Below, in pieces: positions 6,825-63,608 of a stretch of 64,000 bases of DNA. Origin of the DNA: Octopus sinensis. Lineage: Eukaryota. The position numbers and the translations under genes are program-made. Every line of letters begins with the position of its first letter. Position 1 is the stretch's first letter. The DNA lies in NCBI RefSeq assembly GCF_006345805.1, contig NC_043006.1:80786001-80850000 (forward strand). Reading direction: 5' to 3'. Under the pieces are notes generated by a model that saw nothing but the letters and a program-made list of their open reading frames with translations, ran no database searches and had not been told where the DNA came from.

Positions 6825-7820
6825 TATATATATATATATATATATATATTCAGATGAATATGGTACTTAACTTGAGGCACCGAATTAGTATTTAAGTGTA
6901 TAATATGTATAAATACTAAACTATTTCTGGATAATTTCTTTTCCTCCCTCTTTTATGGTAAAGGTTTGGTATATACTCAAAAGTATTAAAATATTTCTAT
7001 CCTTTTGTTATACTATTCTTCTTAATAATCCTCTGAATAACCCTAAACTTTAACCGTATACAATATAGCAACATTGTTTAAAATATTTTTAACTAAAGTA
7101 CTACACGATAAGACTTCCCCTGTTTCATTATCAATGGTCTACTAGAGGGCACCCCCCACCTTAATTGTCAGCTAACGTCTTGTTTTAAGTTTTCCTTCAA
7201 TAAACCTCATGATATTGCTTCTAATAAATCTTAATTTTTATGACTATACCAACTATGATTTCTGCCTGCTCCTTAGGTATACAAGGATTTGATAAACTAC
7301 TCTATAAATTGAAAACTGACCCCATAAAAGCAAAAAAAATCAGTGACAGGCAGAGTCTGTAACAATGTATATATTCTTGATACCTTAGTATCTTCTACGC
7401 TGGAGTGAAGTTCTTTGTCTATCCCCTTAACTTCTTGGAGATTTAGGTATAATTATACTCATGTCTCCATCTGTTTTAATTTAATTAAATTCTATGTCTT
7501 TGTGCGGCTGAGGATTGCTCTGCATTTTAAATTGATGTAATGATTGCAGTGTTCAATTAAATGGAGTTGCATGAAACGATTGGACTGGATTACCTCTGGA
7601 TATCATTGTTACATATTTTGATATATATAATATATATATATATATATGTTCTTTATTTGTTTCAGTCATTTGACTGCGGCCATGCTGGAGCACTGCCTTT
7701 AGTCGAGCAAATCGACCCTAGGACTTATTCTTTGTAAGCCTAGTACTTATTCTATCGGTCTCTAAATGACGGGGACGTAAACACACCAGCATCGGTTGTC
7801 AAGGGATGTTGGAACACACA

Positions 7821-7863
<43 letters not shown>

Positions 7864-8379
7864 GCACACACATATACGACGGGATTCTTTCGGTTTCACA
7901 AGGCTTTGGTCGACCCGAGGCTATAGTAGAAGACACTTGCCCTAGGTGCCACGCAGTGGGACTGAACCCGGAACCATGTGGTTGGTAAGCAAGCTACTTA
8001 CCACTCAGCCACTCCTGTGCCTACATATATATATATATATATATATATATAACCAGTGGAATATCTTGGAATATATATAAATTTATATATATTTGTGAGT
8101 GGTCTGGATTTGAAAGTGAGTGTATATGTGTGTGCGCGCGGAGGTATGTGTGTATGTGCTTGTTCTTACGTAATTTTCATCGACGTTTATCAGCGGAGGT
8201 GTAAACGTCTGTGAAAAAATATGGCTTTTCTTTGTTGTTATATTTGTGCAACCAAAGATGTTGCAGGAATCTACAAAATCCTTTTGTTTCTTTGTAAAAC
8301 ACAGACAACTTGTGATTAGTCCGTTGGAAACTCGTAATTGTCGAAGCTATTGTCCACAAATTATATTAAAGAACTAAAT
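5828..8379 (-). repeat. Right arm of large inverted duplication (probable donor copy)
   Basis: Near-identical to the left arm. Its LINE ORF and host SINE continue uninterrupted into the spacer, whereas the left arm breaks off at 4644. Confidence 0.95.
7648..8023 (-). mobile_element. SINE family 1 (mirror copy in the right arm)
   Basis: Reverse complement of 2409-2782. Confidence 0.9.
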
Positions 8380-9289: not shown

Positions 9290-9796
9290 ATTATAATAAA
9301 TATTGATGTCTATCTTTTGCTTCCGACCACAAATTTGGGATGGTTACGATCGTTTTTATTATTCCTGGAAAAATGTAAGCAAAGGAAACGACACCGATAT
9401 TTAAATTTATGACGCAAAAGAAAATAATTACATACTAGAAACTACTTTGACTAGAGCTATACCGATTCTGCAATCGTAGCATAATTAATAATATTGTTAA
9501 TTTAATTGACTGGCAATTAACTTGAACGAAAAGTTTTCATCCTTAATTCACATAATTATTCAATATTTAAAACTTTTCATAAGTAAGAGATGTTCAGTAC
9601 AGATGTTCATTTTATATTATTAAAACCAGTCATAAAACAGGTATCTATCTCTTATTAAGAAATCATCGTCTTAATCCCCCCTCTCCTCCTCCCCTCCTCC
9701 TCCTCTTCATCATCATCATTGTTATTTTTATTATCATTATTATTATTATCATCATCATCATCATCATCATCATCATTACTATTATTATTTTTCCGG

Positions 9797-9920
9797 CGAG
9801 GTCGCCTTTGCTTTTCATCATTTTGGGATCGATAAATTAAGTACCAATGAAACAGAGGAGTCGATGTAATCGACTAGCCCCCTCCCCAAAATTTCAAGCC
9901 TTGAACCTATAGTAGAAAAG

Positions 9921-15427: not shown

Positions 15428-15633
15428 GGCGGCGAGCTGGCAGAAACGTTTGCACGCCGGGTGAAATGCTTTGTGGCAATTCGCCCGCCGCTGCGTTCTG
15501 TGTTAAAACTCCACCAAAGTCGACTTTGCCTTTCATCCTTTCGGGGTCGATGTAATCGACTTAATCCCTTTGTCATGTACTTGTTTGTCTCTTCTGTGTA
15601 TAGTCCCTTGTGGGTAGTAAAGAAATAGGTATT
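15428..15633 (+). mobile_element. SINE family 2
   Basis: Head GGCGGCGAGCTGGCAGAAACG and body GTCGACTTTGCCTTTCATCCTTTCGGGGTCGAT. Confidence 0.8.
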
Positions 15634-17585: not shown

Positions 17586-18142
17586 ATCTTTTCTACTCTA
17601 GGAACAAGACCTGAAATTTTGGGGGACGGTGCCGTCGATTAGATCAACCGTAGTACGCAACCGGTAATTAATTTATCGACACTTCGATGGAATTTGAACT
17701 TGGACCGTAAAGACGAAATACCTATTTCTTTACTACCCACAAGGGGCTAAACACAGAGAGGAGAAAACAAGGGCAGACAAACGGATTAAGTCGATTATAT
17801 CGGCCCCAGTGCGTAACTGGTACTTATTTAATCGACCCCGAAATGATGAAAGGCAAAGTCAACCTTGGCGGCATTTGAACTCAGAACGTAGCCGCAGACA
17901 AAATACCTATTTCTTTACTATCCACAAAGGGCTAAACACAGAGGGGACAAACAAGGACAGACAAATGGATTAAATCGTTTACATCGACCCCAGTGCGTAA
18001 CTGGTACTTAATTTATCGACCCCGAAAGGGTGAAAGGCAAAGTCGACCTTGGCGGAATTTGAACTCAGAACGTAACGGACGGCATACGAAATACCGCTAA
18101 GCATTTCGCCCGGCGTGCTAACGTTTCTGCCAGCTCGCCGCC
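17586..18142 (-). mobile_element. SINE family 2, compound copy with internally repeated ~185-bp module
   Basis: Head at 18142. GAAATACCTATTTCTTTACTA...GAACTCAGAACGTA occurs twice (~17715-17890 and ~17900-18075). Confidence 0.8.
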
Positions 18143-23790: not shown

Positions 23791-23976
23791 TAGGAGTGGC
23801 TGTGAGATAAGTAGCTTGGTTACCAACCACATGGTTCCAGGTTCAGTCCCACTGCGTGGCAGCTTGGGCAGGTGTCTTCTACTATAGCCTCGGGCCGACC
23901 AAAGCCTTGTGAGTGGATTTGGTAACTGAAAGAAGCCCGTCATGTATATGTATATGTATATATATATATGTGTGTC

Positions 23977-24008
<32 letters not shown>

Positions 24009-24212
24009 AGTGTTTGTGTGTCTGTGCTTGTCCTCCCAACATCGCTTGACAACCAATGCTGGTGTGTTTACGTCCCCGTCACTTACCGGTTCAGCAAGAA
24101 ACCGATAGAATAAATACTAGGCTTACAAAGAATATGTCCTGGGGTCGATTTGCTCGAGTAAAGGCGGTACTCCAGCATGGCCGTAGTCAAATGACTGAAA
24201 CAAGTAAAAGAG
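23791..24212 (+). mobile_element. SINE family 1, full length
   Basis: Head, internal microsatellite and tail all present. Confidence 0.9.
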
Positions 24213-28414: not shown

Positions 28415-29476
28415 ATGTAATCCCTCGGCTATCGCGGGTGTTACGTTCCTAAACCCCCGCGATAGATGAAAATCCTCGAAGTAGAAATAGTACTGTATAT
28501 TTTTTTTATTATTTTTCTAATTTGTATATATTTATTTTACTATTTTTATATATTTAAGCTTTACAAACTCCCCCTCCCACACGCTTAGGAGTAGCCGTGT
28601 CTTCTCTTGCTTTGCGAGTGAGAAATATAGTGATGGGTAGTTGCTGACGCTGCCTTCTCTTCTGTGTAAGGAGGTTTTTATAATCTTCTATGGCACTGTC
28701 GATTGCATTTCTGAACTGCAACGCAGGAATCATTTGGTGGTCCCAATCTTCTGCCATTCTCTGAAGTTCTTTTGCGTTTTTGCTAGAGTTGAGAGGTATT
28801 CTACTGATAGGCTGATTACTTCTTCCCCTAGATCCTCTTGTGATTCTTCTTTCTCAATTGCTGACTTCGTCATTTCTGTCAGATCTTAATCCGTTAACGG
28901 ATCTGAGTGGACCTCGATCAGGTTATTAACGTCTTCGCTATTCATATCGGTGAAGCCATCTCCTCCTAGCAATTTTGCCAGCTTCACTGCCTTATCTACA
29001 TCTGGCATTCAAAGTTTCGCTATTCATCTCCTTTATGGCCTTCTGAATATTATGCAGACACGTTGCAATGGTGTACCCACTCCAGTACTCCTTCAGCGAG
29101 AAGTTATCATGCGAGTCCATAGACTCGACCAGGTGTTGCAGAGAGTTTCTCGTACAGAGCGCCTTAAAAGCACGAATAATGCCTTGATCCATGGGATGGA
29201 TCAGTGATATGGGGTTTGGCGGTAAGAATTCGATTTGTACGCCCTCATACAAAAGTTCGAACGCGTGACCTCCATCATTGTCCTTTAGGCGAGATAAACC
29301 TTGTTCCACCAGCGCATGAAGCACTGGTGGAACCAGTCTGTTGTCAGAAGTTTCGTTATCCATGACTACTAGTTGAGCATCCAATACACTGGCGGCATTA
29401 TGTATTTAATGATGTTGTACTTGCGATGTGTTTAATGATGTTGCACTTGAGATTTGTATTACGAGAGGGTAAACTA
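28415..29476 (-). mobile_element. pogo/Tigger relic
   Basis: GVQIEFLPPNPISLIHPMDQGIIRAFKA (DDE_1 motif); TIR-like GTAATCCCTCG at the left end and a degenerate counterpart at the right. Confidence 0.85.
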
Positions 29477-32929: not shown

Positions 32930-34320
32930 GCTATGGCTGTACAAGTAACGGAGCAAAAGCCGTTATATAATTCTAAGGATCAGCTGCAAGGAATGTATGG
33001 CTGCCGCTTCAAAAGTTCTGAAAATGAACACCTATAGAGAACTAATGAGAAAACTGCTGCTCGTTTAATCAAGATTATTGATTCCATTGCAGACCTGTCT
33101 GCATTTAACAAGACCATATCTCACATGCAGTGTCAGTTCTAGCGTAAACATTTAGGATATTGAACTTGGCAATTGACAAGATCTACATCCTGGATATCAA
33201 AACTAGAAAGATACTGACCACAACAGGCAACTTCTACATTAACAGAGACACTGACAGGATCTACGCGAGACAAATTGATGGCTGTAGAGTAATAAGGTCA
33301 GTCCAAACAGTTTTTGAATGTCGCATTTTATCTCGCAGACACCTGCTGAACTGCAAAAGAGAAATGAGTACATTCCATGCATACTCAAACGTGAGAGCAA
33401 CAACATCTTCAGAGTTGGCGGAGAATTGCTGTGCAGGTACGCTGGGAATACAAATGTCTGGTGCGACCAAAAGGAGGCTAGACTGGCCTACCTAAACAGA
33501 AGCTTGGGAGAGAAGGAGGCATCATAACAGCAAAAAGCAATGCATGGGTACATATCCCGTAAACTAGAAGATAACAACAGTATTGACAGGACGAATAGCC
33601 TCTCCTGAACTTGTGATCGGTCCATCACCTAGAACTGTAACAGGAAACAGCTACTAAAACTTGATAAACTACTCAAAGAAACCACCGAACACCCACGTTG
33701 TGATAGTAAATGTCGGCTTCGCTATACCAGTGTAAAATATATCACCCACATCATCGGCAGCTGCCCCAATCCGTCTATCAGATATTGCCCACCCCTGAAG
33801 CATGATATAGTTCCAATGACTATTTAAAATGCTATCTCCACTAAAGATTGCTCTGAAGAATTCATCAAATTTATATTAGAACCAGCATGTATGCATACCA
33901 TTAAAGGCAAGGAAGACTGGTGGAACACGCGATTAAAAACTATAATTCAGTAGAAATATAATAGGCGTGAAGTTGTTTTGTAGGACGGAGAACAAAAGTC
34001 ATGCCTTGCAGTAGAGATTAACAGTCCAGTGGATCAAAAGCGGATATGAATGCACCATCAAACAAAATCTAGGAAAAGGAGAACATTTATGGTGAATTAA
34101 TGCAGTACTTACAGCTCTTGTGCTCCGACTATAAATTCTTATTTGTATCAATCCTGATTTGGGCATTAGGCTTTGTAGTTACATATTTACGCAAAAACCC
34201 AGAAGTACTAGGCTCTTCGAAGAGTGAGAGCAAAGGAAACTGACGCAGATTCACCAAATTCAATCTATTACTGGCACAGGGAAAATTTGTAAGACATTCC
34301 AAAGATTCTCCACCTGAGAT
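32930..34320 (+). pseudogene. Degraded R4/Dong-like (RLE) non-LTR retrotransposon
   Basis: LDIKTRKILTTTGNF...DTDRIY...SVQTVFE, followed by CCHC and restriction-like endonuclease remnants. Confidence 0.7.
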
Positions 34321-34528: not shown

Positions 34529-34688
34529 CATACATACACATATATTATATATACATACATATATATATATTTATGACAGACATCGTGTATACACTCACAC
34601 ACACACGTACACACGCACACACACATATAGTTTGTGTATGTGTGCATATATATACATACACACACACACATATATATATATATATCTC

Positions 34689-34826
<138 letters not shown>

Positions 34827-35062
34827 TATATATAATAATTAATCAATATAGGGTGGCAAAAAATTTCGTAGAATTTATTTGCCACCAGCGGCCTAGTGGG
34901 AAAAAATTAAATAGTCATAAACCATTTATAAGTTCAACATCACAATCAAGGAATGGCCATAATAGGCCATTCACCCACTAGAAATAACAGCCAAAGCTTC
35001 AACCGCAAAATAACATCAATTCCGCAAACCAGGAGAAAATTAAAAAAACATTTACCCTGTAA

Positions 35063-35167
35063 TTTCTTATACGATGCACCGTTTCATCTATTGTTTAATG
35101 GTAAACTAACCTGATTAAATTAAATCAAGCCAATCTTCCATAGGCCGATAGATTCGTCAGTAAGAAA
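35063..35167 (-). ncRNA. Type I hammerhead ribozyme, family A copy 1
   Basis: Minus strand: UUUCUUA - CUGACGA - AUCUAU...(56 nt)...AUAGAU - GAAA - CGG UGCA UCG - UA - UAAGAAA. Stems I (7 bp), II (6 bp) and III all pair; cleavage triplet GUA with the cut between 35070 and 35069. Confidence 0.9.
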
Positions 35168-35547
35168 CAGCCAAGATCGGAGCAGATATTATCACGAGGC
35201 ATCTCACTCCCTGTCTCGGCAATATCTGACCTAAAATTTTCAAATCATCGCACTCGCGCCAAATTTATCGGCAGCAAATATAAGCCGCCGATTCCATTAC
35301 GGAATTAACCAGAAAATTCATAATTAATCAATATAGGGTGGCAAAAAATTTCGTAGAATTTATTTGCCACCAGCGGCCTAGTGGGAAAAAATTAAATAGT
35401 CATAAACCATTTATAAGTTCAACATCACAATCAAGGAATGGCCATAATAGGCCATTCACCCACTAGAAATAATAGCCAAAGCTTCAACCGCAAAATAACA
35501 TCAATTCCGCAAACCAGGAGAAAATTAAAAAAACATTTACCCTGTAA

Positions 35548-35652
35548 TTTCTTATACGATGCACCGTTTCATCTATTGTTTAATGGTAAACTAACCTGAT
35601 TAAATTAAATCAAGCCAATCTTCCATAGGCCGATAGATTCGTCAGTAAGAAA
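35548..35652 (-). ncRNA. Type I hammerhead ribozyme, family A copy 2
   Basis: Identical to copy 1, offset by 485 bp. Confidence 0.9.
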
Positions 35653-36032
35653 CAGCCAAGATCGGAGCAGATATTATCATGAGGCATCTCACTCCCTGCC
35701 TCGGCAATATCTGACCTAAAATTTTCAAATCATCGCACTCGCGCCAAATTTATCGGCAGCAAATATAAGACGCCGATTCCATTACGGAATTAACCAGAAA
35801 ATTCATAATTAATCAATATAGGGTGGCAAAAAATTTCGTAGAATTTATTTGCCACCAGCGGCCTAGTGGGAAAAAATTAAATAGTCATAAACCATTTATA
35901 AGTTCAACATCACAATCAAGGAATGGCCATAATAGGCCATTCACCCACTAGAACTAACAGCCAAAGCTTCAACCGCAAAATAACATCAATTCCGCAAACC
36001 AGGAGAAAATTAAAAAAACATTTACCCTGTAA

Positions 36033-36137
36033 TTTCTTATACGATGCACCGTTTCATCTATTGTTTAATGGTAAACTAACCTGATTAAATTAAATCAAGC
36101 CAATCTTCCATAGGCCGATAGATTCGTCAGTAAGAAA
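36033..36137 (-). ncRNA. Type I hammerhead ribozyme, family A copy 3
   Basis: Identical to copy 1, offset by 970 bp. Confidence 0.9.
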
Positions 36138-36293
36138 CAGCCAAGATCGGAGCAGATATTATCACGAGGCATCTCACTCCCTGCCTCGGCAATATCTGAC
36201 CTAAAATTTTCAAATCATCGCACTCGCGCCAAATTTATCGGCAGCAAATATAAGCCGCCGATTCCATTACGGAATTAACCAGAAAATTCATAA

Positions 36294-36675
36294 TCTCTCT
36301 CTATATAAACGGCAGTTTGTCTGTGCGTGTTTCTGTGTGTCTGTTAGGTTGTACCCTCACCCTGACCACGGCTTTCAACCGATTCTGATGAGACTTGACA
36401 CACACATAGCCCAATGTCATAATTCAAAACTAACGCAGCGAAAATTTTGAAAAGTTACCCCAGTTCTGAAAAAAATCGATAAATTCGACATGGGGTCGAG
36501 AATCAGAAACACAAACCACAAATTGTCTAGGGGAAGCAACTCCACCTTTTTAACTCTCAAAAAAATTTACCATCATTTTTTTCCATTTTTTTGCTATTTT
36601 TTTGCTATAACTCTCTAAAAATGCTTTATAGTTATTTCCCTTACAAACCTGAGCAACGCCGGGTGATACTGCTAG
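36294..36675 (+). mobile_element. Non-autonomous Helitron (382 bp)
   Basis: 5' TC (TCTCTCTCTATATAAACGG) and 3' CCTGAGCAACGCCGGGTGATACTGCTAG with a subterminal hairpin and CTAG end. Inserted between A and T of the array unit (CATAA^TTAATC) with no TSD. Confidence 0.85.
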
Positions 36676-36769
36676 TTAATCAATATAGGGTGGCAAAAAA
36701 TTTCGTAGAATTTATTTTGATATATATATAATATATATATATCTCACATACATATATATCTCCATTCAC

Positions 36770-37810: not shown

Positions 37811-38225
37811 ATAGGTGCAGGAGTAGCTGTGTGGTAAGTAGCTTGCTCACCAACCACATGGCTCCGGTTTCAGTCCCACTAGATGGCACCTTGAGCAAGT
37901 GTTTTCTACTATAGCTTCCATGCCGACCAAAGCCTTGTGAGTGAATTTGGTTGACGGAAACTGAAAGAAGCCCGTCGTATATATATATATATATATATAC
38001 ATATATATATGTATCTGTGTGTGTATGTATATGTTTGTGTGACTGTATTTGTCTCCCCAACATCGCTTGACAACCGATACTGGTGTGTTTACGTCCCCGT
38101 CAGCTAGCGGTTCGGCAAGAGAGACAAATAGAATAAGTACTAGGCTTACAATGAAAAAGTCCTGGGGTCGATTTGCTCGAGTAAAGGTGGTGCTCCAGCA
38201 TGGTCAAATGACTGAACCAAATAAA
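37811..38225 (+). mobile_element. SINE family 1, full length
   Basis: Head, microsatellite linker and tail present. Confidence 0.9.
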
Positions 38226-41586: not shown

Positions 41587-41721
41587 TAGGCGCAGTAGTG
41601 GCTGTGTAATAAGTAGCTTGCTTACCAGCCAAATGGTTCTGGGTTCAGCCCCACTGCGTGGCACCTTGTGTCTTGATTTGGTAGACGGAGACTCAAAAGA
41701 AGCCCGTCGTATATATGTTTG

Positions 41722-41784
<63 letters not shown>

Positions 41785-42030
41785 TGTGTGTGTGCGTGCG
41801 CGCGTGTGTGTGTGTATGTGTGTGTATCTGTGTTTGTCTCCCCAACATCGCCGTACAAACGATGCTGGTGTGTTTACGTCCCCGTAACTTGGCGTTTCGG
41901 CATAAGATACCGATAGAATAAGTATCAGGTTTCCAAAGAATAAGTCCTGGGGTAAATTTTCTCGACTAAAGGCAGAGCTCCAGCACGGCCGCAGTCAAAT
42001 GACTGAAACAAGTAAAAGAGTAAAAGAGTA
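41587..42030 (+). mobile_element. SINE family 1 with small internal deletion
   Basis: Head, long (TG)n linker, tail ending GTAAAAGAG twice. Confidence 0.85.
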
Positions 42031-43329: not shown

Positions 43330-44020
43330 CCTTTGTTATTATCATGATTGCATATCTAGTTGTACAGTTTGTAAAATGGGGATATCATAAACATTCTGTG
43401 ACCACATGTTTCTAAATTGTTGCTTAATGGGATCAGTATATTTCTCTTCACAACGGGAGCATAGAATGTAGAATAGATTTCTGCTTCTACAGTTCATATT
43501 TGTATTCAGAAATGTTCTTTCGCTTTTTGTGTAAAAGATACAGACCAGGATGTATGAACTGACGTGGACTACAGTAATTGTCATCGCATTTGGATATATG
43601 AATGTTTTCTTATTGTTGTTTATGTCAAACAATGCCTTTGTCAACATTTTTCAAGTTCTCTGGTAGCCCTCCACTTTGACCGAGTATTCAATTTGTAATT
43701 ACATTCTTTTGTACGTTGTTTCGACCAGCGATAGGCAAGTCTGATTTGGCGGAGTTAATTATATTTTTGAGTGAATGGATTGTCTGTTACTATAAATGAT
43801 ATGATTTGGTTCCCATTGCCATGCCTTCAACGTGAAGATACTTCTTCTTATTAAAACATGTATTATTTTCAAGGATAATATTGACCGTTATAGAGGCCAA
43901 GTTGAATTTACTGGTAGTTATTTCTCTAAGTGTTTTTACCCAATTTTTTATTGTCTCTGTACCTAAATCTTGTGGAGTATTTGTGTAGAGGCTGGCTACA
44001 TAAAAAGTAACCAAGAAAAA
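43330..44020 (-). pseudogene. Penelope-like element relic (RT + GIY-YIG endonuclease)
   Basis: ORF 43790-44014 has VTFYVASLYTNTPQDLG...ILENN...GMAMGTK (PLE RT motifs); ORF 43342-43647 has MNCRSRNLFYILCSRCEEKY (GIY-YIG with Cys motif). Confidence 0.8.
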
Positions 44021-45824
44021 AATTGGTTTTATTTTTTGGTGGGTGGGGTGGGGTAAGACAAGGACAAGAAATCAATGTCATACGGAATGGGACTTAGTAT
44101 GAGGACGTTTAGTGACATCAAAATGATGTCATCAAATTTACTTAGGCAATGGCTAGGTCAAATAGGGCTACTGTAAATAATACTGCTTTCGATGTTGGCG
44201 AAGTTTTTCTGGTCGCGGACTCTCCACATAAAAAGGGACAAGGAAATGGGTTTTACTCTATCCCTGCACCTGAGAGAGTGCATATGCTGTGTTTACCTCC
44301 CCTTGAAGTCATTGGCTGTATTGCCCATGAAGTGACTTCTGATGCTGTTGGATGATGTGATGGTTGATCTATAAACCACAGCCCTTGAGAGGCAGAATCT
44401 ACTAGAGGGAATTTGCTAATATTTCGAAAGGTACAGGTTGGAATATGGATTGTATGTGAATGTTTGCATCAGTTTTACTGTACGATGTAAGAAACGAGTA
44501 TTGTCTAAGCAGGGGTAACTGACCTTCATATTATATTGTGGGGTTCAGAAGCTCAGAATATTTATGGGTTCTGAGGAGGTATTTTTTAATTCACGTCAGT
44601 AGGTTCCTAATTATGCCAATATTCAGATAATCAAAATGAAAGGAAGGCATCTCATTCCATGCATGATTAAAGATATGAAATCAATAAGATCACTGTTAAT
44701 TGGGTGCCAAATAGGATAAGAATTACATGTAATATATAAAAATGTAATATTAATTTATATTAATCGTAGGTATTTCAGGTAATTCACAAATCTGTATCTA
44801 CGATCCCCAGCAAAACTCTTCTACAATATTATAGAAAGTAATGCGGTGGGAAAGTTGTAAACACTTAATGGAATATGTAATGAAAAAAGTACCATTACTA
44901 TTCAAAATAGATTCAGAAGAAACGAGAGATGTAGAAAGAGAAAGAATACGAAAACCAAACTTAAAATAAATGTTATAAATTATACGTTGAAAAAAATCTT
45001 ATGGCAGTTCTTTCTTTAGAACATTATAAAGAAGATATTTTATTGCATATGTATGAGTTGAATAGATATCATTTCCAATATTCCAGCTATTCTTGTTCTC
45101 TGATATTAAAAACTTATTCTTTGCTTCTAAGAAAACGCAAAAGCGAAACTAGAGCGAAATATAGGAAAGATACTAAATAGTTTCCCCTTATCGTCTATGT
45201 ACAAATGGGAAAACTAGAAAAAGAATTCCTCTTGTTGACTAACGAACGTCTTTGTGAGTAATACTATGTTTTAAAAACAACGCATTGTCACAATAATGTT
45301 AGGTTTTGGTTGTGATACACAATTCATTCCTGATTTTGCATTATAAAGCAAAGGAGTAAGGTAAATTTGAGGAATTGTATTCGATTATCATATTACTATT
45401 TTTGAGAGACATTTTCCATTAATGTAATTGACAGGGTTAAAAAATCTTTTGCAAATAGTATAAAGAATATTTCATAAAATTTCTATCAAAATATTATATC
45501 ATAAGTATGACTTCCGGCAAATTAAAATGTAACTACGAACTTTCAAGAAAGAAATTGAATTATATCAGCCACAGTATTCCCATCTATAATACTACTCTTC
45601 AGAGTTAATGATCTGCGTGTATACTCTATCTTATCTAAAAATCCACTTCAGTAAACTGTTTCGTTAAAGATTTTCAAAGATTTGTAAAAGCAACAATATA
45701 TTCTGTTTTCGTCCCAGTTTGCAACAAATCTTTATATTAGAGTGTATGTATGTACGAGTGTACACGCACAAACACACACATAAGACACACATGCAAGTAC
45801 ACACACACACACACACACACACAC

Positions 45825-48069: not shown

Positions 48070-48375
48070 ATTTAGAGACAAAACCACTATTTTGCAAAAC
48101 AAACAAGGAAAGAACTTAATCAATACATAAAATTTAATAAATAGTCAAAAAAACCGCCACTACAATCGTTTCTTGTCTTGATCGACAATCTTCAGGTGGA
48201 CTTCCAATAAGTCAGTTTCAAATTATGAAACTGACTTATTGGAAGTCCACCTGAAATTGTCGATCAAGACAAGAAACGATTGTAGTGGCGCTTTTTTTGA
48301 CTATTTATTAAAATTTTATGTATTGATTAGTCTTTCCTTGTTTGTTTTGCAAAATAGTGTGTTTGTCTCTATAAT
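48070..48375. repeat. ~300-bp palindrome of inverted Penelope-type terminal repeats
   Basis: Arms ~48070-48220 and 48226-~48375 are reverse complements around a 5-nt loop AATTA, differing by a few indels. Confidence 0.9.
48157..48199 (-). ncRNA. Minimal type I hammerhead ribozyme
   Basis: CCAC - CUGAAGA - UUGUC GAUCAA GACAA - GAAA C GAUU G UA - GUGG, with all stems paired. The mirror copy at 48247-48288 (+) lacks the core G (CTGAAA). Confidence 0.8.
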
Positions 48376-48797: not shown

Positions 48798-48830
<33 letters not shown>

Positions 48831-49781
48831 GACAGGCTTCTTTCAATTTCCGTCTATCAAATCCACTCACATGGCTTTGGTCGGCCCGAGGCTATAGTAG
48901 AAGACACTTGACCAAGGTGCCACGCAGTGAGACTGAACCCGGAACCATCTGGTTCGTAAGCAAGTCACTTACCACACAGCCAAAATTTAGAAATTAGGAA
49001 TTGGGGTGGATTAAATCCAGTCTGCATGTTTCATAGCTAGAGGACCTTAGAATTAGTAAATAATCCTAACAAGAGGTTGGCTGCAAGCTACACTTCAGGT
49101 CAAGAATAACTTAATTATATGAATCTAACACTGTCGTTGGGAGATCCCGTGTTTGATTGTTGGGGATATATAAATATAAACACCACACACACACACACAC
49201 ACCACACACACATACACTCATAATGTATGTTTAGAGGTGGCGGCTTTCTCAAATGTAGAGTACCGTACTTCAGTCTTAGAAGAAATGCTGAATAGAAGAA
49301 ATTTAATGATGTAATGCTTAATTACGATGTGTTTACTTCAGTATCTACTACCTACATTACAATGTTCCGAAAACTTAAATCACAAGCTCTCACACTCACG
49401 AGCAAACAAATGCATACACACGCACACACACATATATATATATGTGTATGTATGCATATCTATACAGAATCGTACATATATACATACCTATATATATATA
49501 TAATATAATATATGTATGTATGTGCGTGTGTGTGTGTGGTGTTTTGTGTGTGTGTGGTGTGTGTATGTGTGTGTAGTATGTAAATATATATATATATATC
49601 TAAGCAATAAAGGGTTAGCAACGAATTGCCTTACCACATACCGAATTTAGAAATAGCAGTCAAAGAGTTAGCTATTTCTTCTACTAAAACGGAGATCTCA
49701 GTAAAAACAGCAATTGGAAGGCAGACACAAACAGGTAAGAGAGAATGAATTGACGGCAATCTATCATACATTTTTAAGTTA

Positions 49782-49887: not shown

Positions 49888-50204
49888 ATACTATAATCAT
49901 AAATGATTATATATTGAATTTTGAGATACTAGAGGGCACCAACTCAACTCAGTATCAGAGCGAGCTAGAATCCGCAACTAGTATCACCAAACTCAATGTG
50001 TGAATGAAACGATTGTGTCACCACAATTCTTATGCTTTCCTAAAAACTTGATTTCGAAACGTACGTCCGTAGATAACTTAAAAATGTATGATAGATTGCG
50101 GTCAATTCATTCTCTCTTACCTGTTTGTGTCTGCCTTCCATTGCTGTTTTTACTGAGATCTCCCTTTTTAGTAGAAGAAATAGCTATAACTCTTTGACTG
50201 CTAT

Positions 50205-50304
50205 NNNNNNNNNNNNNNNNNNNNNNNNNNNNNNNNNNNNNNNNNNNNNNNNNNNNNNNNNNNNNNNNNNNNNNNNNNNNNNNNNNNNNNNNNNNNNNNN
50301 NNNN
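50205..50304. other. Assembly gap (100 N) inside the family B array
   Basis: Run of N with the same repeat unit on both sides. Confidence 0.98.
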
Positions 50305-52778: not shown

Positions 52779-53167
52779 GACGGCGAGCTGACAGAATCGT
52801 TAGAACGTCGGGCGAAATGCTTAGCGGTATTTCGTCTGCCGTTCTGAGTTCAAATTCCGCCTTTGCCTTTCATCATTTCTGGGTCGATTAAATAAGTACC
52901 AGTTACGCACTGGAGTCGATGTAATCGACATAGACCGTTTGTCTGTCCTTGTTTGTCCCCTTTGTGTTTAGCCCCCTTGTGGGTAGTAAAGAAATAGGTA
53001 TTTCGTCTGTGTTTACATTCTGAGTTCAAATTCCTCTGAGGTCGACTTTGCATTTCATTCTTTCGAGGTCGAAAAATTAAGTACCAGTTGCGTACTGGAG
53101 TCTATATAATCGACTAGCCCCTTCCCCAAAATTTTCCGGCCTTGTGCCTAGAGTAGAAAAGAATATA
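52779..53167 (+). mobile_element. SINE family 2, compound copy
   Basis: Head, then the module TTCTGAGTTCAAATTCC...CTTTCATC..GTCGA twice, tail GCCTTGTGCCTAGAGTAGAAAAG. Confidence 0.8.
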
Positions 53168-55366: not shown

Positions 55367-55770
55367 AGGCGTGGGAGTGGCTATAGGGTAAGTAGCTTGC
55401 TTACGAACCTCATGGTTCCTGGTTCAGTCCCACTGCATAGCATCTTGGGCCAGTGTCTTCCACTATAGCCTCGGGCCGACCAAAGCCTTATGAGTGGATT
55501 TGGTAGACAGAAACTGAAAGAAGCCCGTCGTATATATGTATATGTATATGTGTGTGTATGTGTATATGTTTGTGTGTCTGTGTTTCTCCCCTCCCAACAT
55601 CGCTTGACAACCGATGCTGGTGTGTTTACGTCCCTGTAACTTAGCGGTTCGGTAAAAGAGACCGATAGAATAAGTACTAGGCTTACAAAGAATAAGTCCT
55701 GGGGTCGATTTGCCCGACTCAAGGCGGTGCTCCAGCATGGCCACAGTCAAATGACTGGAACAAGTAAAAG
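55367..55770 (+). mobile_element. SINE family 1, full length
   Basis: Head, linker and tail GGCGGTGCTCCAGCATGGCCACAG. Confidence 0.9.
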
Positions 55771-59438: not shown

Positions 59439-59800
59439 ATGATGCATGGCGACAACTAAGAGGGCGCAATATTTTTTGCTTGTACTCTTCAAGTAAAGAC
59501 AATCATTTGGTGAAATTACTTTTGAGACGGTTATTTGATGTTACGTAAATTTAGCCGTCACTACCAGTTGTTATTGAAAGATTCCAATAAATCGAAGGCG
59601 AAAAGTGCGTTTTATCTATGTTAGCTAAACATCATCATCGTCTTCGTCATCGTGATCTTCATCACCTCCTCGTCAAAATCATTATCAAAATCATTATCAA
59701 AATCATCAAAATCATCATCGTCATCATCATCAGCATCATGGAATTAATAATAATGATAATAATAATAATAATAATGATAATAATAATAATAATAATAATG

Positions 59801-59840
<40 letters not shown>

Positions 59841-60265
59841 TGATAATAATAATAATAATAATAATAATGATGATGATGATATATAATAATAATAATAATA
59901 ATAATGATGATAATAATAATAATAATGATGATGATAATATAATAATAATAATAATAATATAATAATAATAATATAATAATGATGATAATAATAATGATAA
60001 TAATAATAATAATGATGATATAATAAATAATAATAATGATGATATGATAATGATATAATAATAATAATAATATAATAATAATATAATAATAATAATATAA
60101 TAATAATAATAATAATGATAATAATAATAATAATAATAATGATGATGATGATAATAATAATAATAATAATATATAATAATAATGATAATAATAATAATGA
60201 TAATAATAATAATAATGATGATAATAATAATAATAATAATGATGATGATGATAATAATAATAATG

Positions 60266-60320
<55 letters not shown>
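58075..60320. repeat. Compound microsatellite field (GAT, CAT, CCT, CTT, CT, GCT, AAT)
   Basis: Directly visible; source of the homopolymeric ORFs in the track. Confidence 0.95.
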
Positions 60321-60321
<1 letters not shown>

Positions 60322-60339
60322 CGCAAAAGAAATAGACAA

Positions 60340-61135
60340 AGAAAAAAAAAATCCCAGCAATGGTTGAGAAGCTCAGGACTCAAAGCAGAAACAGAGGGAT
60401 TTTTAATTGCAGCACAAGACCAAAGCCTCCCCACCAGAAATTACCAAAAACATGTAATGAAAAGAAATATTACAAGTAACTGCAGAATATGTGGAGATGG
60501 ACAAGAAACAATAAATCATATTATCTCTAGCTGCCCAGTCCTGGCTAAGAAGGAATATATTCACATACATGACAGAGTTGGAACTTACATACATTGGAAG
60601 CTATTCCAACATTATGGAATAACAACAGAAAAAAGATGGTATAGGCACACACCAGAAAAGGTCACAGAAAACGAGAAAGCAACCATTCTCTGGGATATGC
60701 CGATACACACAGATAGAGAAATTAAGGCCAACAGACCAGATATAGTTGTCAGAGACCATGAAGAAAAAAATGCTTTCTAATTGATGTATCAGTACCGGCA
60801 GATGACAACGTGTCTCTAAAAGAAATGGAGAAACTCTCAAAATACAAAGACCTGGAAATAGAGGTAACTAGAATGTGGAATCTGAAAACAGAAACAATTC
60901 CTATCATAGTAGGTGCATTAGGCATGATAAAAAAATATTCAGACAAATACATAACAAAAACACCAGGACTTACAAACACATATAACATACAGAAAATTGC
61001 ACTACTAGGCACTGCACACATCCTACGCAGAACACTTTCCATACAATAACCATCAGAGCATCACAACAAATCACAGCATATACCCAAGGCACACAGAGCT
61101 GCGCTCGGTAGTGAAGTGAAAGCACGCTATAAAAA
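60340..61135 (+). mobile_element. 3' portion of a relatively young R4/Dong-like LINE
   Basis: ETEGFLIAAQDQSLPTRNY, CRICG...ETINHIISSC, LWDMPIHTDREIKANRPDIVV, IIVGALG, QKIALLGTAHILRRTL; one frameshift near 60770; ends in (TAA)n. Confidence 0.9.
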
Positions 61136-61154
61136 TAAAAATAAAACTAACTAC

Positions 61155-61223
<69 letters not shown>

Positions 61224-61224
<1 letters not shown>

Positions 61225-61369
61225 CCTTTCTACTATAGGCACAAGACCTGAAATTTGTGGGGAGGGGATAGTCGATTACATCGACCCCAGTATTTCCCTA
61301 GCACTTAATTTATCGACCGCAAAAGGATGAAAGACAAAGTCGACCTCGATGGAATTTGAACATAAAACG
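61224..61369 (-). mobile_element. SINE family 2, 3' half
   Basis: Reverse complement of the body and tail. Confidence 0.7.
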
Positions 61370-63410
61370 TTATCACCAGAATAGATTATTTAGAGAAGAT
61401 CAGAAGAGATTCTATAAAGAAATTCATGGAGAGTGTACAGATGAAGAGTTGATGCCAGATAACAATGAAAGTCAAGGGTTTTGGAATGACATCTGGAGCA
61501 AAGACAAAGAGTACAAGAAGGATGCTGAATGGTTGCAAGAACTGAAACAAACAGTAGTCTGTCCAAAACAGGCAGAAGTATTCATTTCAGTTAGGGAAGT
61601 GAAGAAAATCAGCAAAAAGATGTGCAACTGGAAAGCCCCGGGATCAGATGGAGTTCAAGGCTACTGGATCAAAAGATTTGTGAATGTGATGCACGAATAG
61701 CTGCGCAAATCAACACCTTGTTAAATGCCGACCAAATAACACCAGAGTGGTTGACATTGGGTAGGACAGTGCTGTGCTTGAAAAACATCGAAAAAGGCAA
61801 TACGGTAGATAATTACAGACCGATATCCTGTCTGCCACTTAAGTGGAACTCATTGACTGGAATACAAGCTGGGCATGTATTCAAAAGTAAACCATTTGTT
61901 ATGCACTGATGACCTCAAACTTTATGGTAAAGGTGAAACCGAAGACAGTTGTATACATTCAGTGCTGGTATCAGAATATAGTTCGGACTGAGAAAGTGTG
62001 GTGTGTTGGTCTTGATGAAAGCCAAAATCAAATGTATGGGTGGGCTATCGATACCGTCGGGGGAGGTTATTGAGCAGATAGAAGAGACAGGCTATAAGTA
62101 CTTGGGGATTTTGGAAATGGATAAATTGATGGAGAAAGAAATGACAGAAAAATTTAAGGTGGAATACTTGAGCAGACTGAGACTGATCCTTAAGTCGAAG
62201 TTAAACGGATGGAATAAGATCGAAGCTATCAACACCTGGGCGGTTTCTCTCCTTAGATATGGAACAGGGGTAATTGCATGGACAGTAGATGAACTAAACA
62301 ACTTAGACAGAAAGACAACGAAGTTGCTAACTAGATATGGGTCACTCCACCCAAAAAGTGACACAGACAGACTGTATGTACCAAGAAAAATAGGGAGAAG
62401 AGGACTTATTGGATGCGAACACAGCTTTAGAGCAGAAGAAAAAAACATAGCATGGTATGTAAAAAATGCCACATAACCGCTATTATTAGAAGTAAGAAGG
62501 GCAGGCATGTGTAGGATGAAATAATGCAAAGATAAAGCACTGTGCAAGCAATTGAAAACGAATGAAACTGAAAATATATGGATAAAGAAAAGAACGTATG
62601 GACAATTTCATAGGGATGTTGAAGATAAGACAGACAGAGAAAAAAGATGGCTGTGGCTGACTAAAAATGATTTAAAACGGAAGCTCTAATCTGTGCTGCC
62701 CAAGAAGAATGCACTAAGAACAAACTACATAAAATACAGAGTAAAGTGATAAGTGCAGAATCTGTGTACAAAATGGTGAAACCGTATGGCGTATTACCAG
62801 CGAATGTACGCCACTAGCACAGAAGAAATTTAAGAGACGCCACGACAATATAGCAAGGGTTATCCATTGGGCACCTTGCAACAAGTATGATCTAGACAAA
62901 GAAAAAAATTGGTACGACCACAAACCCGAAGGCATCATCGAAAATAGTAATGCAAAGATCCTGTGAGATTTTTCAGTGCGACCATTAGATAGAAAATAGG
63001 AAGCCAGACATAGTCTTAATTGAAAACGAAAGAAAACTATGCTAGATCTGAGATATAGCATGCCCAGCTGACAACAAGGTATGCGATTAGGAAGAAAGAA
63101 AAGTCGATAGGTATGACAGATTAGCTTGGGAGGTAAAGTAGTTTTGGTCGATGATAAAGGTAGTAGTGGTACCAATAATTGTCGGAGCCCTGTGAACAGT
63201 GAGTAAAACTCTCGAGAAGTACATGGAACAAATATGGTCTGCAATAAAGGTGGAGCACTTGCAGAAAACAGCACTGCTTGGAACCGCTCGAATACTCCGG
63301 AAGGTGCTCGAAAAATATGAAGTGTTACCTTAGTTCACTGGTAAAGAACAGCTGACACCGTAGTACATCTCCAGGGTTAGAAGCTATGCAACGGCAATGA
63401 TTATAATAAT
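61370..63410 (+). pseudogene. Degraded, internally deleted R4/Dong-like LINE
   Basis: YHQNRLFREDQKRFYKE, NWKAPGSDGVQGYWIK, NYRPISCLP, YKYLGILE, KLNGWNKIEAINTWAVS, HPKSDTDRLYVPRKIGRRGL. Confidence 0.9.
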
Positions 63411-63417
63411 GATTTCA

Positions 63418-63608
63418 AATTTTTCCACAAGAGCAGCAAATTTGGGGGAGGGATAAGTCCATTACATCGACCCCTGTGTTTCATAATTTATCGATCCCGA
63501 CAGGATGAAAGGCAAAGTCAACCTCAGCGGAATTTGAACTCAGAACATAGTGACAGGAGAAATACCACGAAACATTTCATCCAGCGTGCTACCGATTCTG
63601 CTAGCTCG
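63418..63608 (-). mobile_element. SINE family 2, diverged copy
   Basis: GATGAAAGGCAAAGTCAACC...GAACTCAGAAC...GATTCTGCTAGCTCG. Confidence 0.7.

What the first reader, a model, noticed from the sequence alone, without database searches (positions are those of the whole stretch)
34835..36717. Retrozyme-like family A: 485-bp tandem array with an intact hammerhead ribozyme in every unit
Seen: three 485-bp units plus ~48 bp. Each has on the minus strand a complete type I HHR (stem I UUUCUUA/UAAGAAA, core CUGACGA...GAAA, stem II AUCUAU/AUAGAU, stem III with palindromic UGCA loop, GUA site). The few unit-to-unit substitutions all lie outside the HHR. The rest of the unit is rich in hairpins (GGTGGCAAA/TTTGCCACC, GAATGGCC/GGCCATTC, CAGATATT/AATATCTG, CTAGTGGG/CCCACTAG) and has no ORF. 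Established: non-LTR retrozymes of animals are non-coding tandem repeats whose type I HHRs release monomers that circularise. Inference: a transcript would self-cleave into 485-nt monomers, and because the array ends do not coincide with the cleavage site, it may derive from reverse transcription around a circular template. I do not know whether this family has been described; the unit seems longer than the metazoan retrozymes I recall.
Basis: partly seen in the sequence, partly recalled or inferred. Interest (0 to 1): 0.95.

Follow-up and report, generated by a model that had tools for sequence, protein, structure and literature searches.

The report
Tandem repeat carrying hammerhead ribozymes
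A 485-bp non-coding repeat sits three times head to tail, and each copy carries a complete hammerhead self-cleaving RNA motif; it is most likely a new family of the already known animal "retrozyme" mobile elements, with an unusually shaped ribozyme, and not a new kind of system.

Summary
The array is real. There are three 485-bp units at 34835-36294, 99% identical.

Each unit carries on the minus strand a 107-nt type I hammerhead motif. All core nucleotides are present, helices I/II/III are 8/6/4 bp, loop 3 is the palindrome UGCA, and the cleavage site is GUA. A motif this good is expected about 1e-5 times per window and appeared in none of 200 shuffles.

The minus-sense monomer RNA folds far better than shuffles (z -6.2). 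It uses 21 G.U pairs, against 5 for the other strand. The active ribozyme fold lies 2.5 kcal/mol above the optimum. The unit encodes no protein.

The window also holds a decayed Penelope-like retroelement, the proposed mobiliser of such repeats. This fits the known metazoan non-LTR retrozymes. The unit length is within the published range (51-972 bp; the cricket pDo500 satellite is about 500 bp).

Caveats:
- No Rfam hammerhead model matches, even at E<=10.
- The 10.1-11.1 pair is A-U, not G-C.
- Helix II is a 68-nt arm.
- No second locus could be found, so conservation, mobility, cleavage and circles are untested.

The parts
34835..36294 (-). Tandem array of three 485-bp units plus 5 nt. Units are 34835-35319, 35320-35804 and 35805-36289; 36290-36294 is ATAAT. 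The RNA sense is the minus strand.
   Evidence: TRF period 485, 3.0 copies, 99%. Alignment shows 5 variable columns. blastn gives 99.2-100%.
35062..35168 (-). Hammerhead motif of unit 1 (type I). Helix I 35168-35161/35069-35062; core CUGACGA 35160-35154; helix II 35153-35148/35091-35086, closing a 56-nt arm; GAA 35085-35083; helix III plus UGCA loop 35082-35071; A17 at 35070. Predicted cleavage is between 35070 and 35069.
   Evidence: Descriptor scan. Constrained fold -27.9 against MFE -30.0 kcal/mol. Shuffle control.
35547..35653 (-). Hammerhead motif of unit 2, identical in sequence. Predicted cleavage is between 35555 and 35554.
36032..36138 (-). Hammerhead motif of unit 3, identical in sequence. 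Predicted cleavage is between 36040 and 36039.
36295..36676 (.). 382-bp segment unrelated to the unit that interrupts the array between ...CATAAT and TAATCAAT... It has no target duplication. Read with a 1-nt shift it starts TC, ends CTAG and lies between A and T. It is single-copy in the window and its identity is unknown.
   Evidence: Sequence. blastn finds it only once. No 3' hairpin, z +0.6. Alternative reading with an imperfect TAAT/TAGT duplication (family D6). No Rfam match.
36677..36717 (-). 41-bp piece of the unit: the 3'-terminal 41 nt in RNA sense, 100% identical. It is the 5'-truncated end of the array.
   Evidence: blastn; the repeat finder family D6
34670..34834 (.). (AT)n microsatellite flanking the array on the left. 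Its last 5 nt before TAATCAAT (ATAAT, 34835-39) also match the end of the unit, giving junction microhomology.
   Evidence: TRF; sequence; flank comparison
36718..36762 (.). AT-rich tract flanking the array on the right. It shares the 23-mer ATATATATATAATATATATATAT with the left flank, but that string occurs 8 times in the window, so no target duplication can be called.

Best explanation
This is a locus of a non-autonomous, non-coding retroelement of the metazoan non-LTR retrozyme kind.

Proposed cycle:
1. The minus strand of the array is transcribed. This is probably not by Pol III, because the minus-sense unit contains T7, T6 and T6 runs.
2. Each unit folds a type I hammerhead that cuts after GUA. 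[quoted passage not shown] Helix III plus its UGCA loop is a 12-nt quasi-palindrome, so neighbouring ribozymes may pair as a double hammerhead.
3. A host RtcB-type tRNA ligase closes the monomers into highly base-paired circles.
4. A reverse transcriptase from an autonomous element, most likely a Penelope-like element, copies a circle several times round from a nicked AT-rich target and leaves a tandem cDNA array. Here that would be 3.08 units set into an (AT)n microsatellite, starting at a 5-nt ATAAT microhomology and 5'-truncated at the other end.

Shown here: the array, the motif, its non-random quality, the strand-specific RNA structure, the lack of coding capacity, the junction anatomy, and a PLE remnant nearby.

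Inferred by analogy: transcription, cleavage, ligation, and circle-templated reverse transcription.
For: - Array: period 485, three copies, 99% identical.
- Complete type I HHR descriptor in every unit, helices 8/6/4 bp.
- Chance: 0 comparable hits in 200 shuffles, 0.215 relaxed hits per shuffled window with helix sum <=14 against 18 observed. Analytic expectation about 1.2e-5 per window.
- Minus-sense monomer MFE -151.4 kcal/mol, z -6.17. The plus sense gives -109.8.
- The minus sense uses 144 pairs including 21 G.U, against 120 pairs and 5 G.U for the plus sense. The helix II arm is -22.8 against -12.3 kcal/mol. The structure is therefore written for the minus-sense RNA, the same strand as the ribozyme.
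- The HHR-constrained fold is only 2.5 kcal/mol above the MFE in both linear and circular monomers. This matches the statement that metazoan retrozyme circles leave the HHR free (PMC7229834).
- Two helix III strands form a 12-bp duplex of -17.5 kcal/mol, against -0.2 for the hairpin alone.
- No ORF above 60 aa, and no protein relatives. GC is 37%.
- The locus meets the operational definition of an 'active' non-LTR retrozyme: a TRF array, at least 2 consecutive complete HHRs, and HHR MFE below -5 kcal/mol (10.64898/2026.07.22.740005, Methods).
- A PLE remnant lies at 43345-44071(-). Its homologues carry RVT_1 plus GIY-YIG.
- The junctions do not fall at the cleavage site but in an AU-rich stretch that shares ATAAT with the (AT)n flank.
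Against: - No Rfam hammerhead model matches at gathering score, nor at E<=10, even when only 141 nt are searched.
- The 10.1-11.1 pair is A-U, whereas G10.1-C11.1 is described as highly conserved (PMC4209133).
- Helix II is a 68-nt arm, not about 4 bp plus a loop, so the usual loop 1-loop 2 contacts cannot be recognised.
- The family is seen at one locus only in 64 kb. No relative was found in any collection searched. There is therefore no evidence of mobility, no conservation test and no covariation test.
- The three units are too alike to show selection, and their 5 differences look like neutral decay.
- The unit shows no similarity to the PLE remnant or its flanks.
- Unequal crossing-over could have built the array equally well.
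Confidence: 0.75

Rival explanations
1. It is a local minisatellite that carries a real or once-real hammerhead but was amplified at this site by unequal crossing-over or replication slippage. No circular RNA and no reverse transcription would be involved, and the ribozyme may be weak or dead.
For: - Only one locus is seen in 64 kb.
- Units are 99% identical, as expected after recent local duplication or homogenisation.
- The non-canonical A10.1-U11.1 pair and the absence of any Rfam match leave activity open.
- The satellite route is explicitly discussed for these repeats in 10.64898/2026.07.22.740005 (Discussion).
- HHR-bearing satellites such as pDo500 and the newt satellite are known (PMC2837043, PMC7229834).
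Against: - The array sits inside an (AT)n tract with a partial 5'-truncated unit at one end and junction microhomology at the other. That is the anatomy of an insertion, not of in-place growth.
- Strand-specific G.U-rich structure across the whole unit argues for selection on an RNA.
- This rival overlaps the main explanation: the known HHR satellites have been re-read as retrozymes.
Confidence: 0.15
2. It is a tandem array of the terminal repeats (pLTRs) of a Penelope-like element, or a 5'-truncated partial-tandem PLE insertion, and not an independent retrozyme family.
For: - PLE terminal repeats carry hammerheads, and PLEs insert as partial tandems (PMC4209133).
- Retrozymes group with PLE pLTRs in Xenopus (10.64898/2026.07.22.740005).
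- A PLE remnant lies in the window on the same strand.
Against: - No RT or GIY-YIG coding sequence adjoins the array; the remnant is 6.6 kb away.
- There is no sequence similarity between the unit and the rest of the window.
- No HHR core motif is found around the remnant.
- Metazoan PLE hammerheads are minimal, with a helix III of 0-2 bp, unlike this 4-bp helix III and 68-nt helix II (PMC4209133).
Confidence: 0.07
3. The hammerhead-like motif is a chance match inside an ordinary tandem repeat.
For: - No Rfam hammerhead hit at any threshold.
- Two other chance-level motifs exist in the window.
- The scan behind this finding may have examined many windows.
Against: - The expectation is about 1e-5 per window for helices >=8/6/4 with loose loop limits, and none appeared in 200 shuffles.
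- The motif falls in the roughly 3% of the window that is long-period tandem repeat.
- It lies on the strand favoured by G.U pairing.
- Its loop 3 is palindromic.
- Helices I and II appear unforced in the global fold of the 485-nt monomer.
Confidence: 0.03

Closest known systems
Metazoan non-LTR retrozymes (Cervera & de la Pena 2020, PMC7229834; Li, Clavereau & Pollet 2026 preprint, 10.64898/2026.07.22.740005)
   Same: Head-to-tail non-coding repeats with GC below 50% and one type I hammerhead per unit. The RNA is highly self-paired and leaves the HHR free to fold. There are no LTRs, and PLEs co-occur. The unit length lies inside the reported 51-972 bp range.
   Different: - The unit is above the 170-400 nt of the circles characterised experimentally.
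- Helix II is a 68-nt arm, not about 4 bp.
- Helix III is 4 bp, not 1-2 bp.
- The 10.1-11.1 pair is A-U.
- Rfam models do not see it.
- Copy number, expression and circularity are unknown here.
pDo500 satellite DNA of Dolichopoda cave crickets (PMC2837043)
   Same: A tandem repeat of about 500 bp with an embedded hammerhead. A double-hammerhead mode of action has been proposed for it, and compensatory changes reach the 10.1-11.1 pair.
   Different: The pDo500 hammerhead is compact (49 nt), and its cleavage has been shown in vitro. The family makes up about 5% of a genome. No sequence relationship was tested here.
Newt/salamander satellite 2 and axolotl retrozymes (330-350 bp)
   Same: Tandem type I hammerheads with a palindromic loop 3 that allows dimeric action. 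The RNAs are monomeric and multimeric, linear and circular (PMC7229834).
   Different: Those have a 1-2 bp helix III and the canonical loop 1-loop 2 contacts. This one has a 4-bp helix III that might also act alone.
Mussel (Mytilus galloprovincialis) retrozymes, 350-390 bp
   Same: An invertebrate family with long units whose hammerheads lack most of the archetypal loop 1-loop 2 nucleotides (PMC7229834).
   Different: No sequence comparison was possible: no sequences were held in the supplement text. The source organism of this window was not identified.
Minimal hammerheads in the terminal repeats of Penelope-like elements (PMC4209133)
   Same: Type I topology, a palindromic helix III region, a relatively long helix II (6 bp), and an association with retroelements.
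   Different: PLE motifs are minimal and adjoin an RT/GIY-YIG ORF. Here there is no adjoining ORF and the motif is much larger.

Membership tests
Hammerhead ribozyme, type I | Conserved core: C3 U4 G5 A6 N7 G8 A9, G12 A13 A14, the A15.1-U16.1 pair, and H17 (not G) at the cleavage site | tested here: met
   CUGACGA ... GAA, then A(CGG UGCA UCG)U, then A17, in all three units.
Hammerhead ribozyme, type I | Three helices round the core in the order open helix I, closed helix II, closed helix III | tested here: met
   Helices are 8, 6 and 4 bp. Helices I and II form unforced in the 485-nt fold. The full active fold is 2.5 kcal/mol above the MFE.
Hammerhead ribozyme, type I | G10.1-C11.1 pair at the base of helix II (highly conserved, PMC4209133) | tested here: not met
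   The pair is A10.1-U11.1. Compensatory variation at this pair exists in pDo500 (PMC2837043), so this is not disqualifying, but activity may be lower.
Hammerhead ribozyme, type I | Loop 1-loop 2 tertiary contacts of canonical metazoan motifs | tested here: inconclusive
   Helix II is a 68-nt arm (6 + 4 + 14 bp, hexaloop). Helix I carries a UUA bulge after 7-8 bp. No canonical loop nucleotides can be assigned.
Hammerhead ribozyme, type I | Match to the Rfam hammerhead covariance models | tested here: not met
   No hammerhead family appears at gathering score, at E<=10 on 2.1 kb, or at E<=10 on 141 nt. The likely reason is the 56-nt insertion in helix II. A re-scan with the arm deleted could not be run.
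Hammerhead ribozyme, type I | Motif quality beyond chance | tested here: met
   0 of 200 shuffled windows reach >=6/5/3 bp. Analytic expectation is about 1.2e-5 per window.
Hammerhead ribozyme, type I | Conservation of the core and covariation of the helices among copies | tested here: inconclusive
   The three copies are identical in the motif. P(0 of 5 substitutions inside it) = 0.29. No other copies could be found.
Hammerhead ribozyme, type I | Site-specific self-cleavage | not testable with these tools
   Needs in vitro transcription.
Metazoan non-LTR retrozyme | Head-to-tail tandem repeat of about 50-1000 bp with at least two consecutive units that each hold a complete type I HHR (HHR MFE below -5 kcal/mol) | tested here: met
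   Three units of 485 bp. Three HHRs. HHR MFE is -30 kcal/mol. The criterion is from 10.64898/2026.07.22.740005, Methods.
Metazoan non-LTR retrozyme | Non-coding, GC below 50%, no LTRs | tested here: met
   The longest open frame is 60 aa and has no homologue. GC is 37.3%. No terminal direct repeats other than the units were found. PBS and PPT were not searched for specifically.
Metazoan non-LTR retrozyme | Monomer RNA highly self-paired, with the HHR not locked by a competing structure | tested here: met
   z -6.17. 59% of bases are paired. The active fold is +2.5 kcal/mol.
Metazoan non-LTR retrozyme | Many dispersed genomic loci (mobility), with target-site duplications when present | not testable with these tools
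   There is one locus in the window, and the source genome is not in the searchable collections. The flanks are (AT)n, so no duplication can be called.
Metazoan non-LTR retrozyme | Expression as linear and circular monomer RNA | not testable with these tools
   No transcript data are available.
Metazoan non-LTR retrozyme | Co-occurrence with Penelope-like elements in the genome | tested here: met
   The frame at 43793-44071(-) has 114 relatives, best E 6.8e-25. Seven of ten long relatives carry both RVT_1 and GIY-YIG. There is a weak GIY-YIG alignment at 43345-43650(-). The copy is degenerate.
Metazoan non-LTR retrozyme | Unit related in sequence to a PLE terminal repeat | tested here: inconclusive
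   The unit shows no similarity to anything else in the window, but the only PLE present is a truncated remnant without recognisable terminal repeats.
Helitron (for the 382-bp insert only) | 5'-TC and 3'-CTRR ends, insertion between A and T without target duplication | tested here: met
   ...CATAA|TCTCTC...GCTAG|TTAATC....
Helitron (for the 382-bp insert only) | Subterminal 3' hairpin; other copies in the genome | tested here: not met
   The 3' 81 nt fold no better than shuffles, z +0.6. There is no second copy in the window.

The most novel reading that the evidence does not exclude
The family may represent a structurally distinct hammerhead lineage: an A10.1-U11.1 pair, a 68-nt helix II arm in place of loop 2, and a 4-bp quasi-palindromic helix III. 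Current covariance models miss it.

Its mobilising reverse transcriptase may also enter the RNA at one defined AU-rich site. Three events fall within about 9 nt of the 485-nt unit (UUGAUUAAUUAUGAA): the start of the array, the exit into the 382-bp foreign segment after exactly 3.0 rounds, and the re-entry for the last 41 nt. On this reading the locus records template jumps between a retrozyme RNA and another RNA during a single integration event.
Probability: 0.12. Interest if true: 0.55.

Novelty: new member of a known kind. Interest (0 to 1): 0.35.

Why it matters
If confirmed, it adds a retrozyme family at the long end of the size range, and its hammerhead escapes the standard Rfam models. 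Censuses based on those models or on compact descriptors would then undercount such elements.

The ribozyme offers a natural test of how much an A-U pair at 10.1-11.1 and a long helix II arm cost in activity.

The locus also gives junction-level detail for the still unproven step of the retrozyme cycle, reverse transcription of the RNA into tandem DNA. That detail comprises microhomology with an AT-rich target, 5' truncation, and a foreign segment at the same phase.

It does not change the overall picture. Tandem repeats with hammerheads have been known in animals since 1987 and were defined as retrozymes in 2020.

Tried and rejected
- Rfam at gathering score, at E<=10 on 2.1 kb, and at E<=10 on 141 nt gave no hammerhead and no other ribozyme family on either strand. 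The weak snoRNA and miRNA rows are noise.
- Other copies of the family were sought in several ways, all without a real hit:
  - exact look-up of the two unit ORFs;
  - a homology search with a 60-aa unit frame;
  - two pattern scans of metagenome contigs;
  - two pattern scans of viral contigs. The three viral hits to a 19-base pattern are about the number expected by chance. The one read does not continue into a hammerhead; the other two could not be read.
- Identifying the organism failed. The best public relative of a LINE RT piece is 63% identical, and the named hits are a sea cucumber and a coral. This shows only that the source is an invertebrate-like metazoan genome absent from the collections.
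- A second hammerhead-like motif at 48199-48157(-) was rejected as chance. Its helices are only 4/5/2 bp. It lies in one arm of a 94% foldback (48074-48370) whose other arm breaks the core.
- The CTGATGAG string inside the 382-bp insert has no matching helices.
- A target-site duplication cannot be called. The 23-mer shared by both flanks occurs 8 times in the window.
- The Helitron reading of the insert is left open. The termini fit, but there is no hairpin and no other copy.
- A supplement search for similar published ribozyme sequences found nothing.
- Pfam and the word-indexed homology search did not recognise the PLE-like frame. Only the exhaustive HMMER search did.
Full report
WHAT IS THERE

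Tandem Repeats Finder reports one long-period array at 34835-36294: period 485, 3.0 copies, 99% matches. Aligned on the minus strand, the three units (34835-35319, 35320-35804, 35805-36289) differ at five columns only (window positions).

After exactly three units plus 5 nt, a 382-bp segment unrelated to the unit follows (36295-36676). Only then do 41 bp return that are 100% identical to the unit (36677-36717).

The whole structure sits in AT-rich microsatellite: (AT)n at 34670-34834 on the left and an AT-rich tract from 36718 on the right.

The window itself has 35.6% GC and is packed with microsatellites, SINE-like repeats and fragments of LINE, DDE and Penelope-like elements. It is a metazoan, probably invertebrate, genome. 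I could not name the species: the best public relative of a LINE RT piece is only 63% identical.

THE HAMMERHEAD MOTIF

A descriptor scan of both strands of the window finds the same 107-nt motif on the minus strand of each unit, at 35168-35062, 35653-35547 and 36138-36032. Its parts are:
- helix I: GUUUCUUA/UAAGAAAU, 8 bp including a terminal G.U;
- core: CUGACGA;
- helix II: AUCUAU/AUAGAU, 6 bp;
- GAA;
- helix III: ACGG/UCGU, 4 bp, closed by the palindromic tetraloop UGCA;
- A17.

The order is open helix I, closed helix II, closed helix III, which is the type I topology.

All invariant core positions are present. Three features depart from the canonical metazoan type I motif. That motif has a helix I of about 6 bp, a helix II of about 4 bp with loop-loop contacts, a helix III of 1-2 bp, and a highly conserved G10.1-C11.1 pair (PMC4209133).
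- The 10.1-11.1 pair is A-U.
- Helix II closes a 56-nt insertion that itself folds into a long arm of 6 + 4 + 14 bp with a hexaloop, 68 nt in all.
- Helix III is 4 bp.

IS IT CHANCE?

In 200 dinucleotide-preserving shuffles of the whole window, the relaxed descriptor (helices >=4/3/2) hit 0.215 times per window. The largest helix sum was 14, against 18 observed. No hit reached >=6/5/3. An analytic estimate for >=8/6/4, with the generous loop limits I allowed, is about 1.2e-5 per window. The same formula underestimates the relaxed count about threefold, so the true order is 1e-5 to 1e-4.

The motif also lies in the roughly 3% of the window that is long-period tandem repeat, and on the strand that the RNA structure favours (see below). 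Chance is not a serious explanation.

By contrast, the observation that all substitutions lie outside the motif carries no weight: P = 0.29. Three of the five substitutions break predicted G-C pairs and none is compensatory.

RFAM

No hammerhead family, and no other self-cleaving ribozyme family, matches on either strand. This holds at gathering score on the whole window, at E<=10 on 2.1 kb, and at E<=10 on 141 nt centred on one motif. The most likely reason is the 56-nt insertion in helix II together with the A-U pair. I could not test that by re-scanning an edited sequence. Membership of the Rfam families is therefore recorded as tested and not met. This lowers the claim 'canonical hammerhead' but not the descriptor-level match.

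RNA STRUCTURE AND STRAND

The minus-sense monomer, taken from cleavage site to cleavage site, has an MFE of -151.4 kcal/mol. Shuffles average -115.1 +/- 5.9, giving z -6.17. The plus sense gives -109.8, z -5.11.

As a circle, the minus-sense unit forms 144 pairs, 21 of them G.U. The plus sense forms 120 pairs with 5 G.U. The helix II arm alone is -22.8 against -12.3 kcal/mol. G.U pairs become C.A mismatches on the other strand. The structure is therefore specified for the minus-sense RNA, the strand that carries the ribozyme.

Helices I and II of the hammerhead appear unforced in the global fold of one unit variant. In the consensus circle, an alternative pairing of GAAAC with GUUUC competes with them. 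Forcing the full active fold costs 2.5 kcal/mol in both the linear and the circular monomer. This agrees with the published remark that metazoan retrozyme circles leave the ribozyme free to fold (PMC7229834, Discussion).

Helix III with its loop, ACGGUGCAUCGU, is a quasi-palindrome. Two copies form a 12-bp duplex of -17.5 kcal/mol, while the isolated hairpin is marginal at -0.2. A double-hammerhead mode between neighbouring units, as in newt and axolotl repeats, is therefore plausible.

CODING CAPACITY

The longest frames are 53 aa from a start codon and 60 aa stop to stop. Neither exact look-ups nor a homology search found any relative. Unit GC is 37.3%. The minus-sense unit contains T7, T6 and T6 runs. 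These would stop Pol III within each unit, so multimeric transcripts would need Pol II or read-through. That last point is inference.

JUNCTIONS

In RNA sense (minus strand) the array reads: flank, the last 41 nt of a unit, the 382-bp foreign segment, three complete units, flank. The 3' end of the array is ...UAUUGAUUAAUUAU, and its last 5 nt (ATAAT on the plus strand, 34835-34839) could equally belong to the (AT)n flank. The 5' end is a truncated unit.

This is the anatomy expected of target-primed reverse transcription: microhomology at the priming end and truncation at the far end. The ends lie about 230 nt from the cleavage site, so a linear, ribozyme-cut monomer was not the template as such. 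A multimeric or circular RNA fits, which is the published model (PMC7229834, Discussion; 10.64898/2026.07.22.740005).

A 23-nt string is shared by both flanks, but it occurs eight times in the window, so no target duplication can be called. Unequal crossing-over after a smaller insertion could also have produced three near-identical units. A single locus cannot decide between these.

THE 382-BP SEGMENT

- It is single-copy in the window and matches no RNA family.
- It has no hammerhead helices around its CTGATGAG string.
- It has no target duplication.
- Read with a 1-nt shift it begins TC, ends CTAG and lies between A and T, which is the Helitron signature. It lacks the subterminal hairpin, however.
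- Read on the minus strand it ends in a short (GA)n run, as some SINE or LINE tails do.
- An alternative alignment gives an imperfect 4-bp duplication, TAAT/TAGT.

Three events fall within about 9 nt of the 485-nt unit: the start of the array, the entry of this segment, and the resumption of the unit. This may mean only that this AT-rich spot attracts nicking and priming. The unit has perhaps half a dozen comparably AT-rich spots. Alternatively, the segment was picked up by template jumping during one integration event. I leave this open.

CONTEXT: A PENELOPE-LIKE ELEMENT

A frame at 43793-44071 (minus strand) has 114 relatives in the exhaustive HMMER search, best E 6.8e-25. [quoted passage not shown] A downstream frame (43345-43650) aligns weakly with the start of that GIY-YIG domain.

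The copy is truncated and degenerate. Pfam and the word-indexed search did not see it directly. No hammerhead core motif lies around it, and it shares no sequence with the unit. It shows only that PLEs, the proposed mobilisers and ancestors of animal retrozymes, have lived in this genome.

COMPARISON WITH WHAT IS KNOWN

Tandem repeats with type I hammerheads have been known in animals since the newt satellite of 1987. They were defined as non-LTR retrozymes in 2020 (PMC7229834). That definition covers 150-450 bp repeats with GC below 50%, no LTR/PBS/PPT, expression as linear and circular RNAs of about 170-400 nt, ligation by tRNA ligase, and tandem cDNA proposed to be made from circles.

A 2026 preprint reports consensus lengths of 51-972 bp. 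Its operational criterion is a TRF array with at least two consecutive complete HHRs and an HHR MFE below -5 kcal/mol. This locus meets that criterion. The pDo500 satellite of cave crickets is about 500 bp and carries a hammerhead with compensatory variation even at 10.1-11.1 (PMC2837043). Mussel retrozymes (350-390 bp) also lack the archetypal loop contacts.

The unit length is therefore not exceptional. What is particular is the shape of the ribozyme and its invisibility to Rfam.

VERDICT

I file it as a new member of a known kind. Confidence is about 0.75 that it belongs to the retrozyme class. Catalytic activity, circular RNA and mobility are all still to be shown.

No step had to be referred.

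Noticed in passing
window 43345-44071 (minus strand): Degenerate, truncated Penelope-like element. The RT-like frame 43793-44071 has relatives that carry RVT_1 plus GIY-YIG, and a weak GIY-YIG start lies in frame 43345-43650. No hammerhead core motif was found within 41-47 kb.
   Followed up: partly
window 36295-36676: 382-bp foreign segment inside the array, at the same unit phase (within about 9 nt) as the array start and the resumption of the unit. It has TC...CTAG ends between A and T without duplication, but no Helitron hairpin. On the minus strand it has a (GA)n-like tail. It is single-copy in the window. Whether it is a later insertion or the product of a template jump is undecided.
   Followed up: partly
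window 48074-48370: Foldback element with arms 94% complementary. One arm holds a compact hammerhead-like string (48199-48157, minus strand; helices 4/5/2). The string is at chance level, and an indel breaks the core in the other arm.
   Followed up: yes
window 17711-18074; also 52840-53115, 15490-15633, 63454-63550, 9793-9875: A 184-bp SINE-like unit, present once as a 2-copy tandem (90% identical) and as dispersed copies at 77-87% identity. No hammerhead motif was found in it.
   Followed up: partly
window 7770-7985, 2447-2661, 23823-24078, 55406-55634, 37850-38099, 48805-48954, 41625-41884 and others: A dispersed repeat family of about 216 bp with at least 12 copies at 70-99.5% identity, typically abutting microsatellites. 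Two copies (7770-7985 and 2447-2661) are 99.5% identical in opposite orientation.
   Followed up: no
window 60082-62963, 33148-33492, 28995-29405: Fragments of a LINE reverse transcriptase (zf-RVT hit; best public relative 63% identical), a further open frame at 33148-33492 that looked RT-like by eye but had no Pfam hit, and a DDE_1 (pogo/Tigger-type) transposase fragment on the minus strand.
   Followed up: partly
window 50204-50303: A run of 100 N marks an assembly gap, so the window comes from a scaffolded draft. Copy numbers of tandem arrays, including the 485-bp array, may be collapsed by assembly.
   Followed up: no
window, throughout: Very high microsatellite density: 130 TRF rows in 64 kb, including (TAA)194 at 59745-60320 and many AC/AT/ATAC tracts.
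   Followed up: no
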